DNA of 64,000 nucleotides from IMGVR_UViG_3300024308_000188:150527-214526; one strand, 5' to 3'. Shown: positions 17,535-36,429, counted from the first letter of the stretch. Numbers and translations are program-made. Notes: generated by a model from the sequence alone, not told the origin.

Positions 17535-18902
17535 GTGTCTAAGAAATTGTTTTCGCCACTAGCGGAAATGACTTTGTTAAAGACGATAACCGACACTGAC
17601 GTTCCAGAAAAACAAAGAACAATGTTGCTTGCAAAAACTGATGCAAGTCTTTTTCATACACCTGCAACAAAGAAAGCTTTCTTGCGTGTGAAAAAATTGA
17701 CTGAAGCAAAGCAACGTGTTCCTGTTTGGGATGATATAGTTGATGATCCTACGTTCGATGCAAAAGTCCGAGAATTTTTAGCGGACTCAGATGCTAAGCC
17801 TGTAAAAAGTAAAATAAAGGCAAGGACTCTAATTGAGCGTTTAGATCGTTACCGCAAATTACGCGGTCTATTTGATATGGGAAAGGATATTATTTCCTAT
17901 TTCGATTTACAGGATTCTTTAGATCCTGAAGAACTTGCAGATAAGTTAGCGCTTCAACTAGCCAATAACCGTAAAGAGTTTGGAAAGCAACAAGAAATAC
18001 ACACGTTTGGTGTTGGTGGATCTATTCGTGCTTTGGTACGCAGAACTTTGCATAAACCAACAGAACGAATGTACAAAACTGGTTACGCAGATTACGATAG
18101 GCGTAATGGTGGATTGCCGACAACTGGAGTTATGTTACTTGCTGGTACAACGAGCGGTGGTAAATCCGTTCTCGCATCAAACTTGGAACATAATCTAACT
18201 TCTTTAAATTCTGGACTTTCAGCTATCAAGATAACTCTTGAAATGACGGCAGAGCAAGAAACCAACAGGGTTCTTTCAATGCTTACTGGAATTCCATTAT
18301 GGAAGTTCAAACAAAATAAGCTTACTAAACAGGAGAAGAAAAGAATAGAACGTGCTGCCTTAAAGCACGATAAGAAACTGAAAAAACTTGGCAGCAAATT
18401 TAGTTATTCGAGTCCTGATGGTTCAATGACGATAGATGATGTCATTAACATGGTCAAACCTTTTGGTTACAATGTTGTTATTCTCGACTACATTAGTTTG
18501 CTTGAAGGTGTTGACGATGATAACCAGTGGCGTATGCTAAGCGCTATTTGTCGTAAAGCAAAAGTTTATGCAACAGAATTCAAAGTGTTGTTTATAATTC
18601 TTGCTCAGTTAGATAGCGATAGTAACAATCTGAGATATTCTCGTGGTATGAAAGAACACGCTGACATTGTGTGGACTTGGAACTATAGTAAACCTGAAGT
18701 TCGTGCTACGAAGATATTACCAATCGATGTTGTTAAAGCGCGTGACGGTGAATTATTCCGTCTTGAGTTGCAAGAGACATTTGAAACAATGCGTGTTTCA
18801 AACTTACCCGGAGTTGCAGGTTCTCAATTTGGAGCAAGCGCTGCTGGCGGGTCTGACGTTGATGAAGATGATGAAGATGCTGGTCTTAATGCTTTATCGT
18901 AA
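17535..18902 (+). CDS. dnaB: DnaB-like replicative helicase
   Basis: Walker A AGTTSGGKS, TLEM, Walker B VVILDYISLL, LAQL, EHADIV, VKARDGE. Confidence 0.9.
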   Translation: MSKKLFSPLAEMTLLKTITDTDVPEKQRTMLLAKTDASLFHTPATKKAFLRVKKLTEAKQRVPVWDDIVDDPTFDAKVREFLADSDAKPVKSKIKARTLIERLDRYRKLRGLFDMGKDIISYFDLQDSLDPEELADKLALQLANNRKEFGKQQEIHTFGVGGSIRALVRRTLHKPTERMYKTGYADYDRRNGGLPTTGVMLLAGTTSGGKSVLASNLEHNLTSLNSGLSAIKITLEMTAEQETNRVLSMLTGIPLWKFKQNKLTKQEKKRIERAALKHDKKLKKLGSKFSYSSPDGSMTIDDVINMVKPFGYNVVILDYISLLEGVDDDNQWRMLSAICRKAKVYATEFKVLFIILAQLDSDSNNLRYSRGMKEHADIVWTWNYSKPEVRATKILPIDVVKARDGELFRLELQETFETMRVSNLPGVAGSQFGASAAGGSDVDEDDEDAGLNALS

Positions 18903-18911
18903 ACTTAGATA

Positions 18912-18932
18912 AGAGGCACATTTTGTGCCTCT
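18912..18932 (+). terminator. Hairpin AGAGGCACA-ttt-TGTGCCTCT after dnaB
   Basis: 9-bp stem; weak T tail. Confidence 0.55.
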
Positions 18933-18954
18933 ATTCTTTGGGGAAATAAAAAAT

Positions 18955-19764
18955 ATGTTTAGTTCACCAGAAAATAGTCCTTATGGAGTGTTGCCAGAAC
19001 ATACAATACCTTTGGTTGAAATAGAAGAATCTTTGTGTGAACCTTATATTCATGGTCAAACAGTAAAAGTCAAAAAGCTTCCAAGGTTTCAACCAGTATG
19101 TCACATTATAATTCGCCCACCTGAAGCCAAACAAGTTGTTGTAGAAGAAAGTTTCGAGCAAGATTTTATTCAACAAAAATACACAACTGTAGATCTCAGC
19201 AAACTTTCTCGCTACAAAAGAACAGCCGAACAAAAAGAAGTCATGCAGGAAGTTGACATCGAAGTTGATATTTCTCCACCTGACAATCTGATACGTTTAA
19301 AAACTGCCCATATAAAAAACTTTCCTAAAATACTTCAAACTAAATCAGGTTTGATAAAAGATGTTTTTATAAAAGAATATCTTCCTCAAATTTTAGGTAT
19401 TGATGAAGCTTCTGCTTATGTAGAGGCATTCGCAAAAGACGGACTCGGCTTATCTGAATTTGAGATAAGCGTTGATATGATTCCATATATTCATAACGCG
19501 ATCAAGACTGATTTCGTTAGCCTTATCCTAAAACAATTGACTAACCTAAGTGAAGAAACCCGACAAGCTTATATTATAGGTTATGTAACTGATGCTCTTG
19601 CATCTGCGCGTTATCTAGCTAAAAATAATCTTGCGGCTCAACAGCACAGACGTTACCAAGAAAGACTGGACAATCCTGCCGGATATGTTGCTGGCGTTGG
19701 AATGAAAAAATCTAAGGTAATTCGTGATGGTAAAGCAGATAAAGAAAAAGAAGCCAATAGGTAA
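18955..19764 (+). CDS. Hypothetical protein upstream of terminase (positional candidate for small terminase)
   Basis: ATG 18955 preferred because GTG 18925 lies inside the hairpin; function is positional inference only. Confidence 0.7.
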   Translation: MFSSPENSPYGVLPEHTIPLVEIEESLCEPYIHGQTVKVKKLPRFQPVCHIIIRPPEAKQVVVEESFEQDFIQQKYTTVDLSKLSRYKRTAEQKEVMQEVDIEVDISPPDNLIRLKTAHIKNFPKILQTKSGLIKDVFIKEYLPQILGIDEASAYVEAFAKDGLGLSEFEISVDMIPYIHNAIKTDFVSLILKQLTNLSEETRQAYIIGYVTDALASARYLAKNNLAAQQHRRYQERLDNPAGYVAGVGMKKSKVIRDGKADKEKEANR

Positions 19765-22675
19765 AGCCAAAAAACCTAGTGCAATTAAACCATTAGATGA
19801 TTTATTCAATTTGTTGGGTGAAGATGACGATGAAAGCGTCACAATAGTACATGACGACGATGACGACGATGATGGCCATCATTTTAAGCATGATTTAGAA
19901 GATGGCCATGAAGTCTTAGATCTCGAACAACTTATATATGATGAACTGGATAATGCTAGGCCGATCTCTAAAGATTTGCGTATAGACGACAGTTCTATGC
20001 CGATAGCAAAAAACTTCTTACAGTTTGCTAATGATGAAAGTTTTCTTAGTTCCACGCCTTATCTCGAACAGGCCATAATAGGTATCAAACTTTTTGCTGA
20101 GTATTGTCCAAGACCTGAATGTTCTGATTTAAAATGGTTTTCTGATGATGGACATTCGGCAGATGAACCATTAGCAACACTTTCCAGAAAAGTGTCTCTT
20201 TTACATCATGGTGTTTGTCCAAAGTGTGGCGCACGTAAATCCGAACTTATTGCAAGTGGTGAACTAAATTTCTATAACGAACTTGTAGTTGTTGCTGGAC
20301 AGCGTTGTGTTACTGGCGATACTCATATTTTCACTGGAAAAGGTATTGAAAGAATTGGAGATCTTGTTCCGCGCAATGCTAAACAAGGTTACAATGATTT
20401 TAAATATCCTGTATTCAACGGTGAAAAGCTTGAGACAACAAAAGAATTTTATATAACGAAAGCCGAACACGTTTACACACTACAGCTGGATAATGGATCT
20501 ACTTTAAGTGGAACTCTTGACCATCCTGTTCGTGTTGAAAAGTTTGGTTATCGTGCTTTGCACCAAATAAAAGCTGGTGAGCAAGTTGTTGTACAAACCG
20601 GACAAAATTGTTGGGGAAATTTAAACTGCCCTTATACAGTTGATGAATTACGCTCTATAGGATCTGATATTACAAATCGACTAGACTTGTTGGTTGATAC
20701 AGTAGCTGGTAAAGGCTTACATCCAGATCTTTTAAAATACAGTATGAAAAATTGTCGAGAATTTCTACGTGGAGTATTCGACAACAACACAACGCAATAT
20801 CCTGTTGCTTACCACCAATTAGTAAAAGATGTTTATGCCTTGCTGCTAAACATTGGCATTCTGCCTACAATTCAAAATACCTCAGAAACAATCTCCATTT
20901 CTATCTCAAACGAAAACCGAAATATATTATTTGATGATCACAGATCCGTCAAAAGAAATCGGCATCTTTTATCCGTTGTTAGCTGCGGAGTTACAGATAG
21001 AACTGAAGTCATGTACGATGTTACAATGCCTATCACACAACATTTTATTACCAATGGCATTGATTCACATAACAGCGGCAAGTCTGCGGTTGTTACCATG
21101 ATAAGTGCTTATATAGTGCATTTGTTTTTGATGTGTGGTAAGCCCACTGAACTTTTCAATATTCGTAATAACGAAATATTGCATGGAACTTTCCTTGCGC
21201 TTACACTTGGACAAGCAACACAAAACTTATGGGAACCTTTTCTCGGTTACATAAATAATAGTCCTTGGTTTAAAGCTTATCACTTAATGCTTCGTCGTTA
21301 TGAAAAGAAATACGGAGAAGTTCTACTAAAGCTAAAAGATACCTTTATTGATTATCGTCATAGAAACCTTAAACTTTATCCGGCAACTCCAGACAAACGT
21401 GTACTTCGTGGTCGTACTCGTATACTCGGAGCCCTGGATGAACTTGGGTGGTTTGATTCTAATCGTGATAGTAAAAAAGTTAAGGATAACGCGCACGAAG
21501 TTTATAAAGCAATGTCAAACAGTTTGGCTACTGCCAGACAAAGTGAAAAGCGTTTAGTCGAACAAGGCTTTGATCAATTCATGTTAACCGGATATATGTT
21601 GAACGTAAGTTCTCCAAATAATATCCGTGACAAAATCATGGAACTTTATAAACAAAGTTTGGGCAGTCGTAAGATGCTTGGCCTTCATCGTCCAACATGG
21701 AAAATGAATCCACATATTCCATTTGATGGTGAATTGATACGTGAAGAATATCGTAAAGATCCTATTGGAGCTGCACGAGACTTTGGAGCCGAGCCAAGTT
21801 TATCAAGTAATCCGTTTATGAGTAATCACAGATTACTTGAAGAGACTGTTAGAACTAGCGGTAAAAATTGGGTTAAATATGCGCTCAAAACTATTCGTAT
21901 CAGTCGAGACGAAAAGCACAGAACCGTTGAGTTACTTAACGTCAAACAAAATGGCTCTAGGAGTGTTATGGCTATTGATGCTGGATTCTCTAACAACTGT
22001 TTTGCCATAGTCTGTGGATCTTTGCATGATGGTATTCCTCACATGGATTGCCTTTTAGAAATAAATGCTCTTCCTGGTATTCCAATAAGTTTCACTTCTG
22101 TTTTTGCAGATGCTGTACTTCCACTTATTGAACAGCGCAATTGCAGTATTCTTTTGGCAGACCGTTGGAATAGTATCAAGTTATTGCAAGATGCTCAAGC
22201 CACCTATGATAGTTTAAAAGTGTCAGGTCAATATAGCTTACGCTACAACGATATGTACGAAGTTAAAACAGCTATTGAAATGGGTCAATTCAAAATACCA
22301 AACATTGAAGATCCTAGCATTAAAAATATCCTTGCTAGTAACCTCGATGATTATCCAGCGTGTTTTGAAGGTAGACCTGTACATCATTTGCTGCTGCAAC
22401 TTGCAACCGTTGTTGATGTTGGTAAGAAATCTGTTGAAAAAGGAAATGGATTCACCGATGATCTTTGGAGAGCAGCCGCGCTTTGTTATTTTGGTTTAAC
22501 TAATCCAGATTATCAAGAGCATTTGGTTGGTGAGGTTGAAAGTAAAAAAGTTCAACCACCGTTAGCCCTGTTGAAGAAACTCACGGGCGGAATGAATGCG
22601 CTTACTGTTACAACCGGAAACAAAACGTATTCGGGTTCGACAAAATTCATCGGTGTAAAACGAACAGGAAAATAA
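19724..22675 (+). CDS. terL: Terminase large subunit, intein-containing
   Basis: Walker A GQR|SGKS split by intein; Walker B LGALDE; nuclease AIDAG, LADRW, DDLWRA; portal-like gene downstream. Confidence 0.9.
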   Translation: MMVKQIKKKKPIGKAKKPSAIKPLDDLFNLLGEDDDESVTIVHDDDDDDDGHHFKHDLEDGHEVLDLEQLIYDELDNARPISKDLRIDDSSMPIAKNFLQFANDESFLSSTPYLEQAIIGIKLFAEYCPRPECSDLKWFSDDGHSADEPLATLSRKVSLLHHGVCPKCGARKSELIASGELNFYNELVVVAGQRCVTGDTHIFTGKGIERIGDLVPRNAKQGYNDFKYPVFNGEKLETTKEFYITKAEHVYTLQLDNGSTLSGTLDHPVRVEKFGYRALHQIKAGEQVVVQTGQNCWGNLNCPYTVDELRSIGSDITNRLDLLVDTVAGKGLHPDLLKYSMKNCREFLRGVFDNNTTQYPVAYHQLVKDVYALLLNIGILPTIQNTSETISISISNENRNILFDDHRSVKRNRHLLSVVSCGVTDRTEVMYDVTMPITQHFITNGIDSHNSGKSAVVTMISAYIVHLFLMCGKPTELFNIRNNEILHGTFLALTLGQATQNLWEPFLGYINNSPWFKAYHLMLRRYEKKYGEVLLKLKDTFIDYRHRNLKLYPATPDKRVLRGRTRILGALDELGWFDSNRDSKKVKDNAHEVYKAMSNSLATARQSEKRLVEQGFDQFMLTGYMLNVSSPNNIRDKIMELYKQSLGSRKMLGLHRPTWKMNPHIPFDGELIREEYRKDPIGAARDFGAEPSLSSNPFMSNHRLLEETVRTSGKNWVKYALKTIRISRDEKHRTVELLNVKQNGSRSVMAIDAGFSNNCFAIVCGSLHDGIPHMDCLLEINALPGIPISFTSVFADAVLPLIEQRNCSILLADRWNSIKLLQDAQATYDSLKVSGQYSLRYNDMYEVKTAIEMGQFKIPNIEDPSIKNILASNLDDYPACFEGRPVHHLLLQLATVVDVGKKSVEKGNGFTDDLWRAAALCYFGLTNPDYQEHLVGEVESKKVQPPLALLKKLTGGMNALTVTTGNKTYSGSTKFIGVKRTGK
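20306..21073 (+). mobile_element. Intein (256 aa) with degenerate LAGLIDADG remnant
   Basis: Starts CVTGDTHI, block B TLDHP, ends FITNGIDSHN followed by Ser; remnant EFLRGVFDNN..LVKDVYALLLNIGI. Confidence 0.9.
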
Positions 22676-22681
22676 ATTGAT

Positions 22682-22704
22682 TAGGGGATAAACTTTATCC
22701 CCTA
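22682..22704. promoter_or_regulatory. 23-bp palindrome TAGGGGATAAA-C-TTTATCCCCTA
   Basis: 11-bp arms, 1-nt centre, directly before AGGAG SD of the next gene. Confidence 0.55.
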
Positions 22705-22717
22705 TCAGGAGAAACCT

Positions 22718-23401
22718 ATGTCAAATCAATATGTCTATAGTGCTAAGCAGCACTCAGACTTTCTGCAAAAACATAATGTACTTAAAGCCGCAAATTTTCT
22801 TGAGTTTGTCTCTGCCCCTCAGTTTTTAGGGCAATCTGTTATTTGGGAAAAGATGTCTACTGCAAGTGTAATGGACTACGCACACAAAATTACATTTTTT
22901 CAAAATAGTGTAATGGGTGATGTTAACTATTATGAAGCATTATTTTTATATGCGATACATACTCAAATAACAACACTCAATTTTCACGAACACAACGCAC
23001 AACCTAAACACCTTTATTTGTGTCGTACTGAACGTGCATATATGTTCAATCGATTCAAAGATATTTTCCGAGATAGTCCTTGGTTCTCAAATTTACTTAA
23101 ATCATTGGCTGAATACAATAGCAATTCTTTTAAAGCCCTAACAATTAAAGACTGTGACATGGAATTCTCTTTGTGTGGGAATTTAGTTATTCGATTTGTT
23201 GGAGCTATTAACACAGATAATGATCTAAGATTGATGCGCGGTAAATTCATTGTAGGTATTCTGAACTTCCAAAGTTCGCTATTTCCTAGTGTGAAATTGC
23301 CTTATGAAAAACCTCGCCTTATCTATGATAAGTTTTTGTCCGAAAATGTAGATCCTGCTGATTTGCCGTATTTGCCATACATAAACGCTTGTTTAGAATA
23401 A
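22718..23401 (+). CDS. Degenerate paralogue of the terminase ATPase N-terminal region (no Walker A)
   Basis: AANFLEFV..FL vs TerL AKNFLQFA..FL; FRDSPWFS vs INNSPWFK; DLRLMRGK vs DKRVLRGR. Confidence 0.6.
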   Translation: MSNQYVYSAKQHSDFLQKHNVLKAANFLEFVSAPQFLGQSVIWEKMSTASVMDYAHKITFFQNSVMGDVNYYEALFLYAIHTQITTLNFHEHNAQPKHLYLCRTERAYMFNRFKDIFRDSPWFSNLLKSLAEYNSNSFKALTIKDCDMEFSLCGNLVIRFVGAINTDNDLRLMRGKFIVGILNFQSSLFPSVKLPYEKPRLIYDKFLSENVDPADLPYLPYINACLE

Positions 23402-23457
23402 GTAGGGTACATGCTCTAATTCGATAATTTAAGGGTATAAACACAAGGAAACTGATC

Positions 23458-23694
23458 ATGAACCAAACTCAAAGAAAAAAGCCTTTAGATCCATTCGCAC
23501 TTGTTAAACAGCAAAAGCTTTCAAGTGAAAGTAGTGCGATTAAGAGTGAAAGTAGTGTAGATAACACTCGTGCTGGTGTGTGTCCAAAGTGTGGTGTTCC
23601 TATGGATATAGTTAAAGCTAACACACATAGCATGAGCACAGTGGATGCTTATATGTGCGCTCCATGTTGCGTGGTTACACCTATTCCTGCGTAA
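23458..23694 (+). CDS. Small zinc-ribbon protein
   Basis: GVCPKCG...CAPCC; AAGGA SD. Confidence 0.75.
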   Translation: MNQTQRKKPLDPFALVKQQKLSSESSAIKSESSVDNTRAGVCPKCGVPMDIVKANTHSMSTVDAYMCAPCCVVTPIPA

Positions 23695-23706
23695 CATCCA
23701 CTAAAT

Positions 23707-23715
23707 CTGTAAATA
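23707..23715 (+). promoter_or_regulatory. CTGTAAATA motif inside ATCTGTAA/TTACAGAT inverted repeat (23705-23726), upstream of portal
   Basis: Intergenic; motif recurrence. Confidence 0.55.
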
Positions 23716-23740
23716 CAATTACAGATATGGAGAATACATA

Positions 23741-25675
23741 ATGTTCAGTTTTAAGAAAACAATTCCTTCCACTTCTCGAAGTCGAGATCAAGAAGGGTTA
23801 GGTACGTCATCTAAAGATCGTGTTAGTGTTCGCAAAGCTGCTGAGGCAGAACAAAAGAAAACACGATCCGAACAACAAGGCTTCAGATCTGAAAGTAACG
23901 CTTCAGCTGGCGCACGTATGAGTAGTTTAGACGTAAACTTAGATACCTCTTTATTGTTAGAAGGTATGGACAGTGATTTAAAAGATCAGCAACTGTTCAG
24001 AGTTTATCGTGATATGTACTGGCACGATCCTGTTTGTGGATCTTGTGCAGATTTATACTCAACACTTCCTTTTTCTGAATTTAGTTTGGCCGGAGCTTCG
24101 GACAAATATTTAGATCAATACAGAGAAGTAGTTGAACTCTTGAATCTGCGTACAGCAATGCCTCGTATTAGTATTGACCATCAAGTTACTGGCGCATTCA
24201 CTGCAACTATTTTGTACAACAGCCAGAAAAAGCAATTCATTGATTTGATGTGTCACAAATATGAAAACCTTACCGTACACTCTTTGCCATTATTTGGTCA
24301 AGATCCAATAATGTACTTGCAGCTTGATGCTGATATGAAACGTACTTTGGGTTTGCCTTCAAAACGCATAGAGCAAATACGTCAAAGTCTTGGTATAGAA
24401 TTTTTTAACAAACTACTCAACGATCAAATTGAATTAGATCCAGTAGGTACTTTGTATGTTCCACGTAAAACTTTCTCTTATGGTGAAGGTGTTAGTTACT
24501 TTAAACGAGTGCTTCCACTTTGGTTGATTGAGAAAAATTTATATCGCGGAACACTGATTGAAAGTGGACGTAGACAACGAGCCATACTTCACTTAATGTT
24601 AGGTGAAGAAGGTTGGGAACCTACACCACAAGATTACGAACAAGCAACTGATTTATTTCTTGATGCTGATGCTGATCCTATAGGTGCTGTTGTCGCAACA
24701 CGTTTAGGTATTAGCGTTAGCGAGTTAAGACCAGGTGGTGACTTTTGGAAAGTTACTGACATTTGGGATCAAACAACTCCAGCAAAAATGAGAGCGCTTG
24801 GAATAAGTGAAGCTTTCTTGAGTGGTGACGCAAGTTATCAAACAATGGAAGGCTCAATGACTGTTTTCACTGAAACAATGAGAGCATATCGTGATATGCA
24901 AACTCGTTGCATTTTCTACGATAAAGTATTTCCGTTAGTTTCTATGATGCACGGTAATACAATTCGTAAAGGTAAGATTGTTAAACGTGAAGGCTTGATG
25001 TCTGGAACTACAGAAGAACGCTTACGTTTAATGCAAGATGGTTCAAAACTTTTAATTCCAAATGTACATTGGGCAAAAAGTTTAAAGCCTGAGCAAGATC
25101 AATCTTATATGGAAATTCTTGATCGTATGACTGCTGCTGGAATTCCAGTTCCAATACGAATGATGGCTGCTGCTGGTGGATTTAACTTGGATCAGCTGTT
25201 ATTAAATCAAGATGAAGATTTTGCTATTCAACGTCAACTTCTTGATTACAAAAAACGTGTTGCCGATATGACCGCTAAATATGCTGCTGCCGAAGGCGGT
25301 GGCGCTGAAGGCGGTGGCGGAGGAATGGGATCTTTCAGTTCTTCAAGTTCTGATCGTTATTTCAATCCAGATCGTTATCTCGATAAAGTAACTGCACAGC
25401 CACGGGGATTCAGTAATATTCTTGGAGGTGCTTCGCAAAATCTTTTACGTCACGATTTTGGTGAAGGAAGCGAGTTATATACTCACGATCATAGCGGTAA
25501 GAAAAAGCATGTATTTAATCAGACTGCGAAAAACAAGATGATCAATGCCAAAATTACAAAAGCCTTAGTTGCTATGAGTAAGAGTGGTAATGCACCATTG
25601 TTAACGCACGAAACAACGACAAATTTAAAGCCAACGCAAAGAGAAATGCAACGGCTTCTTGGAGTAGTTAAATGA
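23741..25675 (+). CDS. Portal protein (probable)
   Basis: Position after terL; 644 aa; YRDMYWHDPVCGSCAD, RALGISEAFLSG portal-like pattern. Confidence 0.7.
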   Translation: MFSFKKTIPSTSRSRDQEGLGTSSKDRVSVRKAAEAEQKKTRSEQQGFRSESNASAGARMSSLDVNLDTSLLLEGMDSDLKDQQLFRVYRDMYWHDPVCGSCADLYSTLPFSEFSLAGASDKYLDQYREVVELLNLRTAMPRISIDHQVTGAFTATILYNSQKKQFIDLMCHKYENLTVHSLPLFGQDPIMYLQLDADMKRTLGLPSKRIEQIRQSLGIEFFNKLLNDQIELDPVGTLYVPRKTFSYGEGVSYFKRVLPLWLIEKNLYRGTLIESGRRQRAILHLMLGEEGWEPTPQDYEQATDLFLDADADPIGAVVATRLGISVSELRPGGDFWKVTDIWDQTTPAKMRALGISEAFLSGDASYQTMEGSMTVFTETMRAYRDMQTRCIFYDKVFPLVSMMHGNTIRKGKIVKREGLMSGTTEERLRLMQDGSKLLIPNVHWAKSLKPEQDQSYMEILDRMTAAGIPVPIRMMAAAGGFNLDQLLLNQDEDFAIQRQLLDYKKRVADMTAKYAAAEGGGAEGGGGGMGSFSSSSSDRYFNPDRYLDKVTAQPRGFSNILGGASQNLLRHDFGEGSELYTHDHSGKKKHVFNQTAKNKMINAKITKALVAMSKSGNAPLLTHETTTNLKPTQREMQRLLGVVK

Positions 25676-26457
25676 AGTTAGTCCGTGACCTTTTTTATAA
25701 AGGAACTGCGGCAATATCTGACTGGCTTGTATTCCACCGATTCATTCGTCAGCCATTATCTTTCTTTGAGGATAATCTGAGGAAAGGAATTTTGTCTGAA
25801 GTAAAAGCAATTGAAGATATTCTCTTTGCTTTTACTTCAGAACATTCCGCTTGGTTTACAGACAGACACTTCAATCAATACGGTGCATTTATGTGCCGTG
25901 ATTTGATAAACAAAGAACTTTTCGATATAAATGATTATGTAGCTACGGATCTATATGATGCTGTGGCGCGGTCATCCATCAAAAGTAATTTTTCAGTTGA
26001 AGTGCAAAAGATGGTTGCTGAGCTTTCTAAGAAATTTTCAGAAGATCCTCGTTTCCAAAACACAACAACTGAAACTTATTTGAATTTATTTCACAGAACG
26101 CTACCTTTATTGTTTTTGAGATTTTTTGCACCAAAAGATTTGGTGAATTTCTCTAACAATTTCTTATATGCTATCGCAGCATTAGTAGCGTTTGATCGTA
26201 AAGGCTACTCAGAGTTTACCTCACCTGAAGCCATAAAAACAAAAACCTTTCTTGAGGATTTTTTGTTTGAAGTTGTCAACGATAGCTTTCACATATACAG
26301 CTACAATTTTTATATGGTTGTGCGTCGTATGTTTCCTGAAAGAATGTCTAACAGAATGGCAACCGTGCAATTCAAATTCAAATCCCTTCAAAGTGATAAT
26401 TACATATATGCGCCAAAACGCATGGTTAGTGATGTTGCCCTGTTCAGGAGAAAATGA
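25672..26457 (+). CDS. Hypothetical protein
   Basis: 261 aa; 4-nt overlap with portal end. Confidence 0.75.
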   Translation: MKLVRDLFYKGTAAISDWLVFHRFIRQPLSFFEDNLRKGILSEVKAIEDILFAFTSEHSAWFTDRHFNQYGAFMCRDLINKELFDINDYVATDLYDAVARSSIKSNFSVEVQKMVAELSKKFSEDPRFQNTTTETYLNLFHRTLPLLFLRFFAPKDLVNFSNNFLYAIAALVAFDRKGYSEFTSPEAIKTKTFLEDFLFEVVNDSFHIYSYNFYMVVRRMFPERMSNRMATVQFKFKSLQSDNYIYAPKRMVSDVALFRRK

Positions 26458-35595: not shown

Positions 35596-36429
35596 ATGCA
35601 ATCTTTTTTCCAATTTTGTACAAAATACCATGATGGAATGTGGCCTGATTTAATTTTGATCGGAAGTCAGATATTCGGTCAAGTTAAGCCTGATGAATTC
35701 TTAAAAAGAGACGGTATAAACATTCCGAAACCTTGCACTTATTTAGATGTTGGTAACTTGCAGTTAGATGCTAGTTACTACAGGGAACAGGCTTTGACAT
35801 CTAGCCTTCTTATAGGTCAAAGATCCGGTAAATCTTATTTGTTAAGAGCTTTAGTGAGCTATATATCTAGCTTCTCAGAAGAATTTAATTTAGGTCAGAA
35901 TTCTACACAGTCAAAAGATTATTTTCATATTGATGTGCCGAATGCAAATGTTGAAGATCATGTAAGAAGTATATGTGAAACTTTAACAGCCTTTAAAGCA
36001 GCCTTTACTGTGGAAATGTTTGAATCAGGAAATCAGACAGCTGCACGAATTCTAATGAATTCTGGATTCACCGTGGTTTTGTGTGATGGTATTCCAAATT
36101 CAGGAAACGCTGATTATTTTGAACTTGGAAGATGTATTGGTTATATATCTGAAGAGTTAGCTTGGAGATATAAAGCAGTAAAAAATAAATCAATGAATCC
36201 AATTGACCGACTTAATTCTTTAAAGATGTCGAGCATTGCACATAATGCACCTCTCTTTATTTCGATAAGTTCGGTTTTCGATGATGATACCTTTTTAAAA
36301 TGTCGCGTTAATTTATTCATACGTCGCGCTACTTGGGAAGTCAACCCAAATATAAAAGGATCTTTACTTGGAGAGTTATTCATCGCAGATCCTACAGGAG
36401 CCATGCGTGATTTTGGATCACGAGTTTAA
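35596..36429 (+). CDS. Stand-alone paralogue of the terminase ATPase domain (intein-free, no nuclease domain)
   Basis: GQRSGKS identical to spliced TerL Walker A; RATWEVNPNI vs RPTWKMNPHI; DPTGAMRDFGS vs DPIGAARDFGA. Confidence 0.8.
   Translation: MQSFFQFCTKYHDGMWPDLILIGSQIFGQVKPDEFLKRDGINIPKPCTYLDVGNLQLDASYYREQALTSSLLIGQRSGKSYLLRALVSYISSFSEEFNLGQNSTQSKDYFHIDVPNANVEDHVRSICETLTAFKAAFTVEMFESGNQTAARILMNSGFTVVLCDGIPNSGNADYFELGRCIGYISEELAWRYKAVKNKSMNPIDRLNSLKMSSIAHNAPLFISISSVFDDDTFLKCRVNLFIRRATWEVNPNIKGSLLGELFIADPTGAMRDFGSRV

What the first reader, a model, noticed from the sequence alone, without database searches (positions are those of the whole stretch)
22718..23401. Catalytically dead terminase-ATPase fragment directly behind terL
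Three separate blocks align in order with this phage's own TerL: AANFLEFV/AKNFLQFA, DSPWFS/NSPWFK, DLRLMRGK/DKRVLRGR. There is no Walker A, no clear Walker B and no nuclease domain. Its place between terL and portal, with its own SD and palindrome, suggests a packaging regulator, a motor accessory subunit or a decoy for terminase-sensing immunity.
Basis: partly seen in the sequence, partly recalled or inferred. Interest (0 to 1): 0.65.

Follow-up and report, generated by a model that had tools for sequence, protein, structure and literature searches.

The report
Probable dead terminase-ATPase copy beside terL
Right behind the DNA-packaging motor gene (terL) of an uncultured jumbo phage sits a small, fast-evolving gene that is probably, not certainly, a degenerate copy of the motor's ATPase domain with every ATP-handling motif lost; its function is unknown.

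Summary
A 227-aa ORF (22718-23401) lies 42 nt after terL, with its own SD and an 11-bp-arm palindrome. It carries the three quoted blocks in TerL order and has no Walker A, no acidic Walker B and no nuclease domain. It is a real gene: intact in five contigs and four other samples, with dN/dS 0.14. It is also the fastest-evolving of 16 neighbouring genes. Its family is limited to a narrow clade plus one 164-aa homologue (21% identity) in the same slot of a related phage.

Homology to the TerL ATPase domain is moderately supported, not proven.
- hhalign gives P 6.5e-5 to 5e-3 and probability 7-64%.
- No shuffle reached the real score (0/250 and 0/300).
- A TerL HMM ranks it third of 518 genome ORFs (E 9e-4).
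- The alignment is collinear over about 200 columns, and the predicted secondary-structure order agrees.

The gaps remove TerL's zinc ribbon and exactly the P-loop, which is the intein site. Weaknesses: BLASTP is not significant, the C-terminal half alone is not significant, no fold could be predicted, and the divergent homologue adds no signal.

Function is untested. I favour a TerL mimic. A second ATPase-only TerL paralogue, with intact Walker motifs, lies at 35596-36429.

The parts
22718..23401 (+). ORF227 (P0001), 227 aa: the candidate degenerate TerL-ATPase-like protein
   Evidence: The ORF is seen. Orthologues of 67-69% identity occur in the same position, and a 99%-identical copy lies on a 319.5-kb IMG/VR contig. 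dN/dS is 0.14. It is intact in four other samples. hhalign to TerL.
22787..22810 (+). Block 1, AANFLEFV (residues 24-31), matching the TerL APNF..F helix (TerL 95-102)
   Evidence: K23-V41 is invariant in the four close orthologues. The asparagine is invariant in 28 TerLs but is T in the 164-aa homologue.
22916..22954 (+). Block GDVNYYEALFLYA (residues 67-79), matching TerL GELNFYNELVVVA (strand beta-1 before the P-loop). The alignment gap that removes the P-loop follows directly after residue 79.
   Evidence: The gap runs from ORF residue 79 to 80, against positions 120 to 129 of the TerL model, which is GQRSGKSA.
23072..23089 (+). Block 2, DSPWFS (residues 119-124), matching TerL SPWF (W invariant in 28 TerLs)
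23222..23245 (+). Block 3, DLRLMRGK (residues 169-176), matching TerL KRVLRGR, about 10 residues before the Walker B DE. This is a possible trans-arginine-finger position. The following strand, FIVGILNF, has no acidic residue.
   Evidence: R174 is invariant even in the 164-aa homologue. [quoted passage not shown] This block is not independently significant.
22707..22711 (+). Shine-Dalgarno AGGAG, 6 nt before the ATG
22682..22704 (.). Perfect palindrome (11-nt arms, 1-nt centre) in the 42-nt terL-ORF227 spacer. It is not a terminator and is not conserved in the orthologous loci.
19724..22675 (+). terL, 983 aa: the proposed parent-type gene. ATPase with a zinc-ribbon insert, an intein, and a nuclease domain.
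   Evidence: phrog_17415 at E 1.9e-282. 81 homologues. The ATPase-domain model of an intein-free homologue has pLDDT 90.6 and matches the solved TerLs of P74-26, Sf6, T4, HK97 and D6E.
20306..21073 (+). Intein (TerL residues 195-450), inserted in Walker A between AGQR and SGKS. This is the same spot that is missing from ORF227 in the alignment.
   Evidence: Pfam Intein_splicing match, motif positions, alignment gap.
23458..23694 (+). 78-aa zinc-ribbon ORF, conserved between terL and the portal in the other 42 of the 43 related loci surveyed (70-91 aa)
23741..25675 (+). Portal protein
   Evidence: phrog_16240 at E 4e-209.
35596..36429 (+). P0087, 277 aa: a second TerL paralogue made of the ATPase domain only, with an intact Walker A (GQRSGKS) and a Walker-B-like ISEE, and without zinc ribbon or nuclease

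Best explanation
ORF227 is a genuine, lineage-restricted, very fast-evolving accessory gene. It most likely descends from a copy of a large-terminase ATPase domain of this phage group and has become a pseudo-ATPase.

Relative to TerL it:
- starts at the APNF helix;
- lacks the zinc-ribbon insert and the eight P-loop residues, which form the intein insertion site;
- lacks the Walker B acidic pair, everything after motif III, and the nuclease domain.

It keeps framework motifs: NF..F, the beta-1 strand, D.F...SPWF, three short strands, and LR..RG at the position where P74-26 TerL carries its trans-acting arginine finger. It therefore cannot bind or hydrolyse ATP in the way TerL does. This is shown by the absence of motifs.

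No promoter-like site above chance and no terminator-like site separates it from terL and the portal, so it is probably made together with them late in infection (inferred).

Mechanism, inferred and not shown: it acts by protein-protein mimicry of the TerL ATPase domain, occupying a surface that normally meets TerL. Because it is dispensable in most relatives and evolves about 7 times faster than TerL, I favour a role in conflict, either against a host sensor of terminase or against a competing phage's motor, over a role as a built-in motor part.
For: It is a real gene:
- Orthologues lie in the same slot.
- dN/dS is 0.14 and dN is 0.21, the highest of 16 neighbouring genes. Amino-acid identity is 69% against 80-97% for the neighbours.
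- Other samples carry strain variants with no indels inside the ORF. By my own reading, these are about five synonymous and two non-synonymous changes.

Homology to TerL:
- hhalign of P0001 against 28 intein-free TerLs gives P 6.5e-5, 126 columns and 64% probability. The orthologues hit the same region at P 0.003-0.007. No shuffle reached the real score (0/250), and a Gumbel fit gives p 1.5e-5.
- The profile version gives P 0.0032, with 0/300 column shuffles reaching it.
- Among 246 other ORFs of the genome only P0087, a true TerL paralogue, scores higher.
- HMMER with a TerL HMM gives E 9e-4 in a set of 521 sequences, with the ORF and its orthologues at ranks 3, 4, 5 and 7.
- The greedy alignment is collinear over 207-214 columns, ORF 6-227 against TerL about 65-365.
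- Secondary structure from the TerL-free ORF227 model agrees with the confident TerL model at Q3 0.64, against a null of 0.37 +/- 0.07 with maximum 0.50.
- ORF227 resembles TerLs of its own clade more than distant ones (Spearman 0.76).
- Other ORFs found in the same slot elsewhere show no TerL signal.
- P0087 shows that copies of the TerL ATPase domain do arise in this genome.

Loss of catalytic motifs.

Accessory status: the slot is empty in most of the 43 related loci.

Precedent: T4 vs.8 is a standalone TerL-ATPase-like protein (PMC13601566).
Against: - HH-suite probability is only 7-64%, below the usual confidence level.
- BLASTP is not significant.
- No Pfam, PHROG, NCBIfam, PADLOC or PDB sequence hit was found.
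- The profile search of 1.84 billion proteins found no TerL.
- The C-terminal half alone is not significant: 12/200 shuffles reach the local score and 28/200 the global score.
- The 164-aa homologue shows no TerL signal on its own, and adding it to the profile does not raise the score (P 0.0048).
- The residues most conserved across the ORF227 family (the N-terminal Y.YS..H..L...N and TQITTL) are not TerL motifs.
- Three TerL hallmarks are lost in the 164-aa homologue: the N of the NF motif, the W of SPWF, and the G of RG.
- The fold could not be predicted (pLDDT 35; ESM Atlas model 0.34).
- The secondary-structure comparison rests on that low-confidence model.
- Nothing bears directly on function.
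Confidence: 0.6

Rival explanations
1. ORF227 is an unrelated orphan accessory gene ('moron') that landed in a hypervariable slot behind terL. Its resemblance to TerL is chance plus selection by the first reader.
For: - The slot holds at least four unrelated gene families in related phages: a MazG-like family of 209-238 aa, a 174-175-aa family, a 101-aa ORF and a 109-aa ORF. In most relatives it is empty.
- ORF227 has lower GC (34.2%) than terL (37.9%) and the portal (39.1%).
- HH probabilities are low.
- The 164-aa homologue has no TerL signal, and the family's best-conserved motifs are not TerL motifs.
- The C-terminal half is not significant.
- No fold could be predicted.
Against: - The score exceeds every shuffle and every other non-TerL ORF of the genome.
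- HMMER, an independent method, agrees.
- The alignment is collinear over the whole protein, with gaps at discrete modules of TerL.
- Secondary-structure order agrees.
- The other slot ORFs score at background.
Confidence: 0.3
2. ORF227 is TerL-derived and works inside the phage's own packaging machinery. It would be a non-catalytic subunit or regulator that binds TerL, the small terminase or the portal and tunes assembly, initiation or timing of the motor, for instance by donating its conserved arginine to a neighbouring TerL active site or by capping the ring.
For: - It sits in the packaging operon between terL and the portal, with no terminator.
- The LR..RG motif is retained. R174 is invariant even in the 164-aa homologue, which ends a few residues later.
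- The corresponding position in P74-26 TerL is the trans-acting arginine finger (PMC5727402).
Against: - It is absent from most phages with the same TerL, zinc-ribbon ORF and portal module, so the motor does not need it.
- It evolves far faster than any motor part, and identity falls to 21-24% in a phage whose TerL is 63% identical.
- The block that carries the arginine is not independently significant.
Confidence: 0.15
3. ORF227 is a decaying remnant of a partial terL duplication with no function of its own.
For: All catalytic motifs are lost. It has the highest dN in the neighbourhood.
Against: - dN/dS is 0.14 against the window orthologue and 0.09 between L003 and L004.
- The reading frame is intact in all five orthologous contigs and in four other samples.
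- A homologue persists at 21% identity in a distant relative.
- It has its own SD.
Confidence: 0.04

Closest known systems
The phage's own large terminase ATPase domain (PHROG 17415; Pfam PF27249 on the precomputed hits). The jumbo-phage group is the 'Lupandier' group of Lu11, PaBG, NCTB and the Dickeya and Erwinia phages (PMC7412058).
   Same: Collinear weak similarity over about 200 residues, at 21-24% identity to own-clade TerLs on the fixed alignment. The two share the NF..F helix, the beta-1 strand, D.F...SPWF, a triple short-strand unit and the LR..RG loop, in the same secondary-structure order.
   Different: ORF227 has no N-terminal acidic region, zinc ribbon, intein, P-loop, Walker B acidic residues, lid subdomain or nuclease domain. 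It is not recognised by the PHROG or Pfam terminase models.
P0087 of the same genome (window 35596-36429)
   Same: Both are short proteins that start at the TerL APNF helix. Both lack the zinc ribbon and the nuclease, have lower GC than terL, and are lineage-specific.
   Different: P0087 is clearly TerL-related (hhalign 96%, P 2e-9; BLASTP E 4e-8). It keeps Walker A, a Walker-B-like EE, motif III and the lid. ORF227 keeps none of the nucleotide motifs and is not detectably similar to P0087.
T4 vs.8, an uncharacterised standalone protein homologous to the T4 terminase ATPase domain (PMC13601566)
   Same: It is a phage-encoded, nuclease-less paralogue of the phage's own TerL ATPase domain, of unknown function and similar size (219 aa).
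   Different: vs.8 keeps Walker A and Walker B and activates EcAvs2 on co-expression (PMC13601566). ORF227 lacks both motifs and has no detectable sequence similarity to vs.8 (hhalign P 0.22).
Pseudo-enzymes in ring ATPases, such as the non-catalytic clamp-loader delta and delta-prime subunits (from general knowledge, not tested here)
   Same: The concept is the same: a paralogue of an oligomeric ATPase that has lost nucleotide motifs but keeps the fold and interfaces.
   Different: There is no evidence that ORF227 joins any ring. It is not conserved with the motor.

Membership tests
Large terminase ATPase domain (ASCE P-loop) | Significant sequence or profile similarity to the family | tested here: inconclusive
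   hhalign gives P 6.5e-5 to 4.8e-3 and probability 7-64%. HMMER gives E 9e-4 in 521 sequences. No shuffle reaches the real score. However, there is no hit to the PHROG or Pfam terminase models, BLASTP gives E 0.56, and no TerL appeared in the 1.84-billion-protein profile search.
Large terminase ATPase domain (ASCE P-loop) | Walker A, G/AxxxxGK[S/T] | tested here: not met
   A regular-expression search finds none and there is no GK[ST]. The alignment puts an 8-residue gap exactly over GQRSGKSA.
Large terminase ATPase domain (ASCE P-loop) | Walker B hhhhDE with a catalytic glutamate | tested here: not met
   The aligned strand is FIVGILNF. The protein has no adjacent acidic pair anywhere.
Large terminase ATPase domain (ASCE P-loop) | Motif III (coupling motif, VSSP in this family) | tested here: inconclusive
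   Three orthologues end in FVSSPVD, which aligns to the TerL NVSSP. The window's protein has INACLE there. The match is not significant alone.
Large terminase ATPase domain (ASCE P-loop) | RecA/ASCE alpha/beta fold | tested here: inconclusive
   The AF2 model has pLDDT 34.9 and the ESM Atlas model 0.34. The order of secondary-structure elements agrees with the TerL model at Q3 0.64 against a null of 0.37.
Full-length large terminase | C-terminal RNase-H-like nuclease domain | tested here: not met
   The protein ends at the position of TerL motif III, and nothing aligns beyond about TerL extein residue 367.
T4 vs.8-like standalone TerL-ATPase paralogues | Conserved Walker A and B, and sequence similarity to the terminase ATPase domain | tested here: not met
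   There are no Walker motifs, and hhalign to T4 vs.8 gives P 0.22. P0087 of the same genome fits this description, not ORF227.
Small terminase | Conserved partner gene of terL across the phage group | tested here: not met
   ORF227 is absent from most related loci. The conserved neighbour is the 266-282-aa ORF upstream of terL.
Anti-defence decoy of terminase sensors (Avs1-3, Upx) | Binding to, or inhibition of, a terminase-sensing defence protein | not testable with these tools
   The only evidence is indirect: fast evolution, patchy distribution and co-location with terL. There is no PADLOC hit.

The most novel reading that the evidence does not exclude
ORF227 and its 164-aa homologue would be the first example of a phage-encoded 'pseudo-terminase'. 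This would be a TerL ATPase-domain copy stripped of all nucleotide-binding motifs, possibly through imprecise loss of the P-loop intein, and kept because it mimics TerL. As a mimic it would either blunt host immune sensors that recognise the terminase ATPase domain (Avs1-3, Upx) or poison the packaging ring of competing phages. Together with P0087, the genome would then show a graded series: active TerL, an ATPase-only paralogue, and a dead mimic.
Probability: 0.15. Interest if true: 0.8.

Novelty: new variant of a known kind. Interest (0 to 1): 0.45.

Why it matters
The terminase ATPase domain is one of the few phage proteins that bacterial immune receptors recognise directly (Avs1-3, Upx; PMC13601566). 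Its ring assembly is also the core of the packaging motor. A co-expressed, catalytically dead, fast-evolving look-alike of that domain would be a natural candidate for two roles: a counter-defence decoy, or a dominant-negative weapon between phages. It would also be a case of pseudo-enzyme evolution in a virus.

If the similarity turns out to be chance, the finding shrinks to an orphan gene in a hypervariable slot behind terL. That is ordinary.

The ATPase-only paralogue P0087 is solid. It gives a second example, beside T4 vs.8, of a class of proteins whose function is unknown.

Tried and rejected
Searches and predictions that gave nothing for ORF227:
- Family scans: Pfam, PHROGs, NCBIfam and PADLOC gave no hit.
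- PDB sequence profile search: none at E <= 10.
- tblastn against 50,697 phage records: none.
- Word search of 5.8 billion proteins: only three close orthologues.
- Profile search of 1.84 billion representatives: only its own cluster.
- AlphaFold2 on the 4-sequence alignment: pLDDT 34.9, unusable. I did not run a structure search on that model.
- ESM Atlas: no feature hit, and its own model has pLDDT 0.34 with structural neighbours at TM <= 0.42 that mean nothing.
- Complex prediction of ORF227 with the TerL ATPase domain of an intein-free homologue: 'no answer', score 0.00. This is evidence neither for nor against binding.

Comparisons that were negative:
- ORF227 against P0087: P 0.3.
- ORF227 against T4 vs.8: P 0.22.
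- The C-terminal half (residues 138-227) tested alone against the expected TerL segment is not significant.
- Adding the 164-aa homologue to the profile did not raise the TerL score.
- The slot ORFs of NCTB, L003, L005 and L010 are related neither to ORF227 nor to TerL.

The palindrome as a regulatory element of the gene is rejected as a conserved feature. It is unique in the window and absent from L003 and L004. No terminator-like site is present, and promoter-like sites are no more frequent than in shuffles. Rfam found nothing in the window.

RNA evidence: no listed run is on record as RNA, and the four wastewater runs labelled RNA-Seq are only guessed to be RNA. Only contigs could be laid, and these cannot show expression.

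I never sent the joined (intein-free) sequence of the window's own TerL to any search or fold tool. I used intein-free natural homologues instead. In one search the two extein parts were added to the alignment as separate fragments.

Full report
**Context**

The window is the last 64 kb of a 214.5-kb virus record. Near-identical contigs of 243-320 kb exist. The terL product hits phrog_17415 at E 1.9e-282. Its nearest named relatives, at about 40-48% identity, are phage NCTB and the jumbo Erwinia phages (Y3, Alexandra, Yoloswag, pEa_SNUABM) and Dickeya phages (JA11, JA33, AD1). PMC7412058 calls this the 'Lupandier' group and notes terminase inteins in it.

The local gene order, all on the + strand, is:
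- DnaB-like helicase, 17535-18902;
- a conserved 279-aa ORF that overlaps the terL start;
- terL, 19724-22675;
- ORF227, 22718-23401;
- a 78-aa zinc-ribbon ORF, 23458-23694;
- the portal, 23741-25675.

The phage occurs in subsurface and wastewater metagenomes.

**Checking the observation**

There is no Walker A, no hhhhDE and not a single adjacent acidic pair. The SD (AGGAG, 6 nt before the ATG) and a perfect palindrome with 11-nt arms at 22682-22704 are real. The hairpin folds at -15.6 kcal/mol, z -2.4. It has no T-run, and no terminator-like site lies in 19000-26000. The palindrome is unique in the window and is not present in the orthologous loci, so it is not a conserved part of the gene. 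One correction: the zinc-ribbon ORF sits between ORF227 and the portal.

**Is it a real gene?**

Yes.
- Orthologues of 67-69% identity and 227-229 aa lie in the same position on a 329-kb contig, a 71-kb contig and two short contigs.
- Against those, ORF227 has dN/dS 0.14. Between L003 and L004 it is 0.09. So it is under purifying selection.
- Its dN of 0.21 is the highest of 16 neighbouring genes. For comparison, TerL has 0.03 and the portal 0.03. Its amino-acid identity is 69%, against 80-97% for the neighbours.
- Contigs from four other samples carry it without indels. By my own reading of the listed changes, they are about five synonymous and two non-synonymous.

A survey of 43 related loci shows that the gap between terL and the zinc-ribbon ORF is normally empty, at about 260-300 nt between terL and the portal. 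In some lineages it holds unrelated genes: a MazG-like family of 209-238 aa, a 174-175-aa family, a 101-aa ORF and a 109-aa ORF. One occupant is a true but very distant homologue of ORF227. This is the 164-aa ORF of a 286.6-kb contig whose TerL is 63% identical and whose portal is 71% identical to the window's. BLASTP gives 21% identity at E 2.5e-5, and hhalign gives P 6e-5. The family is therefore older than the narrow clade and diverges extremely fast.

**Is it related to TerL?**

Simple methods say no:
- BLASTP gives E 0.56.
- No family-library hits.
- No PDB sequence hit.
- No TerL in a profile search of 1.84 billion proteins.

Targeted profile methods say probably:
- Against 28 natural intein-free TerLs (A2), the 4-sequence profile gives P 0.0032 over 119 columns.
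- The window's protein alone gives P 6.5e-5, 64% probability and 126 columns. Each orthologue alone hits the same TerL region at P 0.003-0.007.
- No shuffle reaches the real scores: 0/300 column shuffles and 0/250 sequence shuffles, with a Gumbel p of 1.5e-5.
- Among natural controls, the other 79 ORFs of at least 100 aa in the window reach at most 24.4. The 166 ORFs of the rest of the genome reach at most 34.0, through short P-loop or CxxC matches. ORF227 scores 41.1. The one exception is P0087, described below.
- HMMER, a different method, ranks the genome's 518 ORFs plus the three orthologues as follows: TerL, P0087 (E 4.8e-11), ORF227 (E 9e-4), then the orthologues at ranks 4, 5 and 7.

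With greedy extension the alignment is collinear over 207-214 columns, ORF 6-227 against TerL extein about 65-365. Its large gaps remove discrete TerL modules: the two halves of the four-cysteine zinc ribbon, and exactly GQRSGKSA, the P-loop.

The ATPase domain of an intein-free TerL folds confidently (pLDDT 90.6) and matches solved TerLs of P74-26, Sf6, T4, HK97 and D6E. Along the sequence alignment, its secondary structure agrees with that of the ORF227 model, which was built without any TerL sequence. Q3 is 0.64 against 0.37 +/- 0.07 (maximum 0.50) for circular shifts. The helix-helix-strand-strand-strand-loop-strand series before and through the Walker B strand matches in order and length.

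On the fixed alignment, ORF227 shares 21-24% identity with TerLs of its own clade and 13-18% with distant ones (Spearman 0.76). This result is not corrected for phylogeny or alignment quality.

**Weak points**

- HH probabilities are far below 95%.
- The 164-aa homologue has no TerL signal alone, and adding it does not raise the profile score (P 0.0048).
- That homologue has lost the N of the NF motif, the W of SPWF and the G of RG.
- The family's most conserved motifs (the N-terminal Y.YS..H..L...N and TQITTL) are not TerL motifs.
- The ORF227 model is of low confidence (pLDDT 35; ESM 0.34).

I put the probability of true homology at about two in three.

**What is kept and what is lost**

Lost:
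- the acidic N-terminus;
- the conserved glutamine of the PY..QA..IG stretch, invariant in the 28 TerLs; by its position upstream of Walker A I take it, untested, for an adenine-contacting residue;
- the zinc ribbon;
- the P-loop;
- the Walker B aspartate and glutamate;
- the lid;
- the nuclease.

Kept:
- the NF..F helix;
- the beta-1 strand (GDVNYYEALFLYA against GELNFYNELVVVA);
- D.F...SPWF;
- three short strands;
- LR..RG, where R174 is invariant even in the 164-aa homologue, which ends a few residues later.

In TerL the matching R-G is invariant in 28 sequences and lies 10 residues before the Walker B aspartate. [quoted passage not shown] That equivalence is inference.

The missing P-loop coincides with the insertion site of the TerL intein, AGQR|C...HN|SGKS at residues 195-450. 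Imprecise loss of an intein from a duplicated copy would explain the gap. However, inteins prefer catalytic loops anyway, so the coincidence is weak evidence.

**A second paralogue**

ORF 35596-36429 (P0087, 277 aa) aligns with the whole TerL ATPase domain: 247 columns, 27% identity, hhalign 96%, P 2e-9. BLASTP to the window's TerL gives E 4e-8. It begins at the same APNF helix as ORF227 and also lacks the zinc ribbon. Unlike ORF227, it keeps Walker A (GQRSGKS), a Walker-B-like ISEE, motif III and the lid, and it stops at the end of the ATPase domain. It is known only from this genome and near-identical contigs and has no match in the phage collection.

It is the same kind of protein as T4 vs.8, a standalone terminase-ATPase homologue with Walker motifs and unknown role (PMC13601566). 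It shows that copies of this domain arise in this lineage, which raises the prior for ORF227.

**Mechanism**

Shown:
- The protein cannot use ATP the way TerL does.
- It is dispensable for the TerL, zinc-ribbon ORF and portal module in most relatives.
- It is under purifying selection but evolves about sevenfold faster than TerL.

Inferred:
- It is co-transcribed late with terL, because no promoter-like site above chance and no terminator separates them.
- It acts as a mimic of the TerL ATPase domain.

I favour a conflict role because of its evolutionary rate and patchy distribution. That role could be to titrate a host sensor of terminase such as Avs1-3 or Upx, which recognise the ATPase domain (PMC13601566), or to poison a competitor's ring. 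A motor regulator that lends its arginine or caps the ring is the main alternative within the homology reading. A chance resemblance in an orphan gene remains a serious rival (about 0.3). A dead remnant is unlikely.

**Comparison and novelty**

ORF227 fails the defining catalytic features of the TerL ATPase family and cannot be filed as a member in the functional sense. It may be a descendant. Standalone TerL-ATPase paralogues are known (T4 vs.8), as are pseudo-enzymes in general. My two paper searches on terminase paralogues, truncation and duplication turned up no description of a Walker-less terminase look-alike next to terL. I rate it a new variant of a known kind, of moderate interest, limited by the uncertain homology and the lack of any functional evidence.

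I did not send the joined extein sequence of the window's TerL to any tool, and used natural intein-free homologues instead. The complex prediction gave no answer and is not used as evidence.

Noticed in passing
window 35596-36429 (+): P0087, 277 aa, is a nuclease-less, zinc-ribbon-less paralogue of the TerL ATPase domain. It has an intact Walker A (GQRSGKS), a Walker-B-like ISEE, motif III and the lid, and ends at RDFGSRV. Support: hhalign 96%, BLASTP E 4e-8 to the window's TerL, HMMER E 4.8e-11. It is known only from this genome and near-identical contigs. It lies at a strand-switch point and has GC 35.1%. It is the same kind of protein as T4 vs.8.
   Followed up: partly
window 20306-21073 (+), inside terL: A 256-aa intein (TerL residues 195-450) splits Walker A between AGQR and SGKS. 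Relatives carry no intein (716-740 aa), a mini-intein, or an intein with a LAGLIDADG domain (about 1210 aa). Inteins in this phage group are mentioned in PMC7412058.
   Followed up: partly
window about 20105-20230 (+), TerL residues 128-169: The TerL ATPase domain of this family carries a four-cysteine zinc-ribbon insert (CPRPEC ... CPKCG) upstream of Walker A. The four cysteines are invariant in 28 homologues. Both paralogues, ORF227 and P0087, lack it.
   Followed up: no
between terL and the zinc-ribbon ORF in loci L001, L003, L005, L010, L017, L019-L021, L044, L045, L047: This intergenic slot is an insertion hot spot. It is empty in most of the 43 related loci. Elsewhere it holds at least four unrelated ORF families: a MazG-like family of 209-238 aa in NCTB, L019-L021 and L047; a 174-175-aa family in L044 and L045; a 101-aa ORF; and a 109-aa ORF.
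   Followed up: partly
L004 7927-8001 compared with L003 7688-7993: L004 keeps about 35 nt of the 101-aa ORF found in L003, L005 and L006. That small gene was therefore removed by an internal deletion. The window has a different spacer, which carries the palindrome.
   Followed up: no
window 23458-23694 (+): A 78-aa zinc-ribbon ORF is conserved at 70-91 aa between terL and the portal in the other 42 of the 43 loci surveyed. It matches phrog_13972, labelled 'DNA ligase', and is so annotated in RefSeq for phage Alexandra. That name is implausible for a protein of this size. Strain contigs show loose ends at its serine-rich repeat, 23523-23557.
   Followed up: no
window 18925-19764 (+): A 279-aa ORF overlaps the terL start by 41 nt. 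It is conserved at 240-282 aa upstream of terL in the relatives whose upstream genes were listed and has only a weak PHROG hit of unknown function. By position it is a candidate small terminase.
   Followed up: no
G000:C1 71481-73142 (-) and 112739-113881 (+), outside the window: Two ORFs (553 and 380 aa) give long but weak hhalign alignments to TerL region about 58-269 (P 0.016-0.018). I suspect they are other P-loop ATPases rather than TerL paralogues, but I did not examine them.
   Followed up: no
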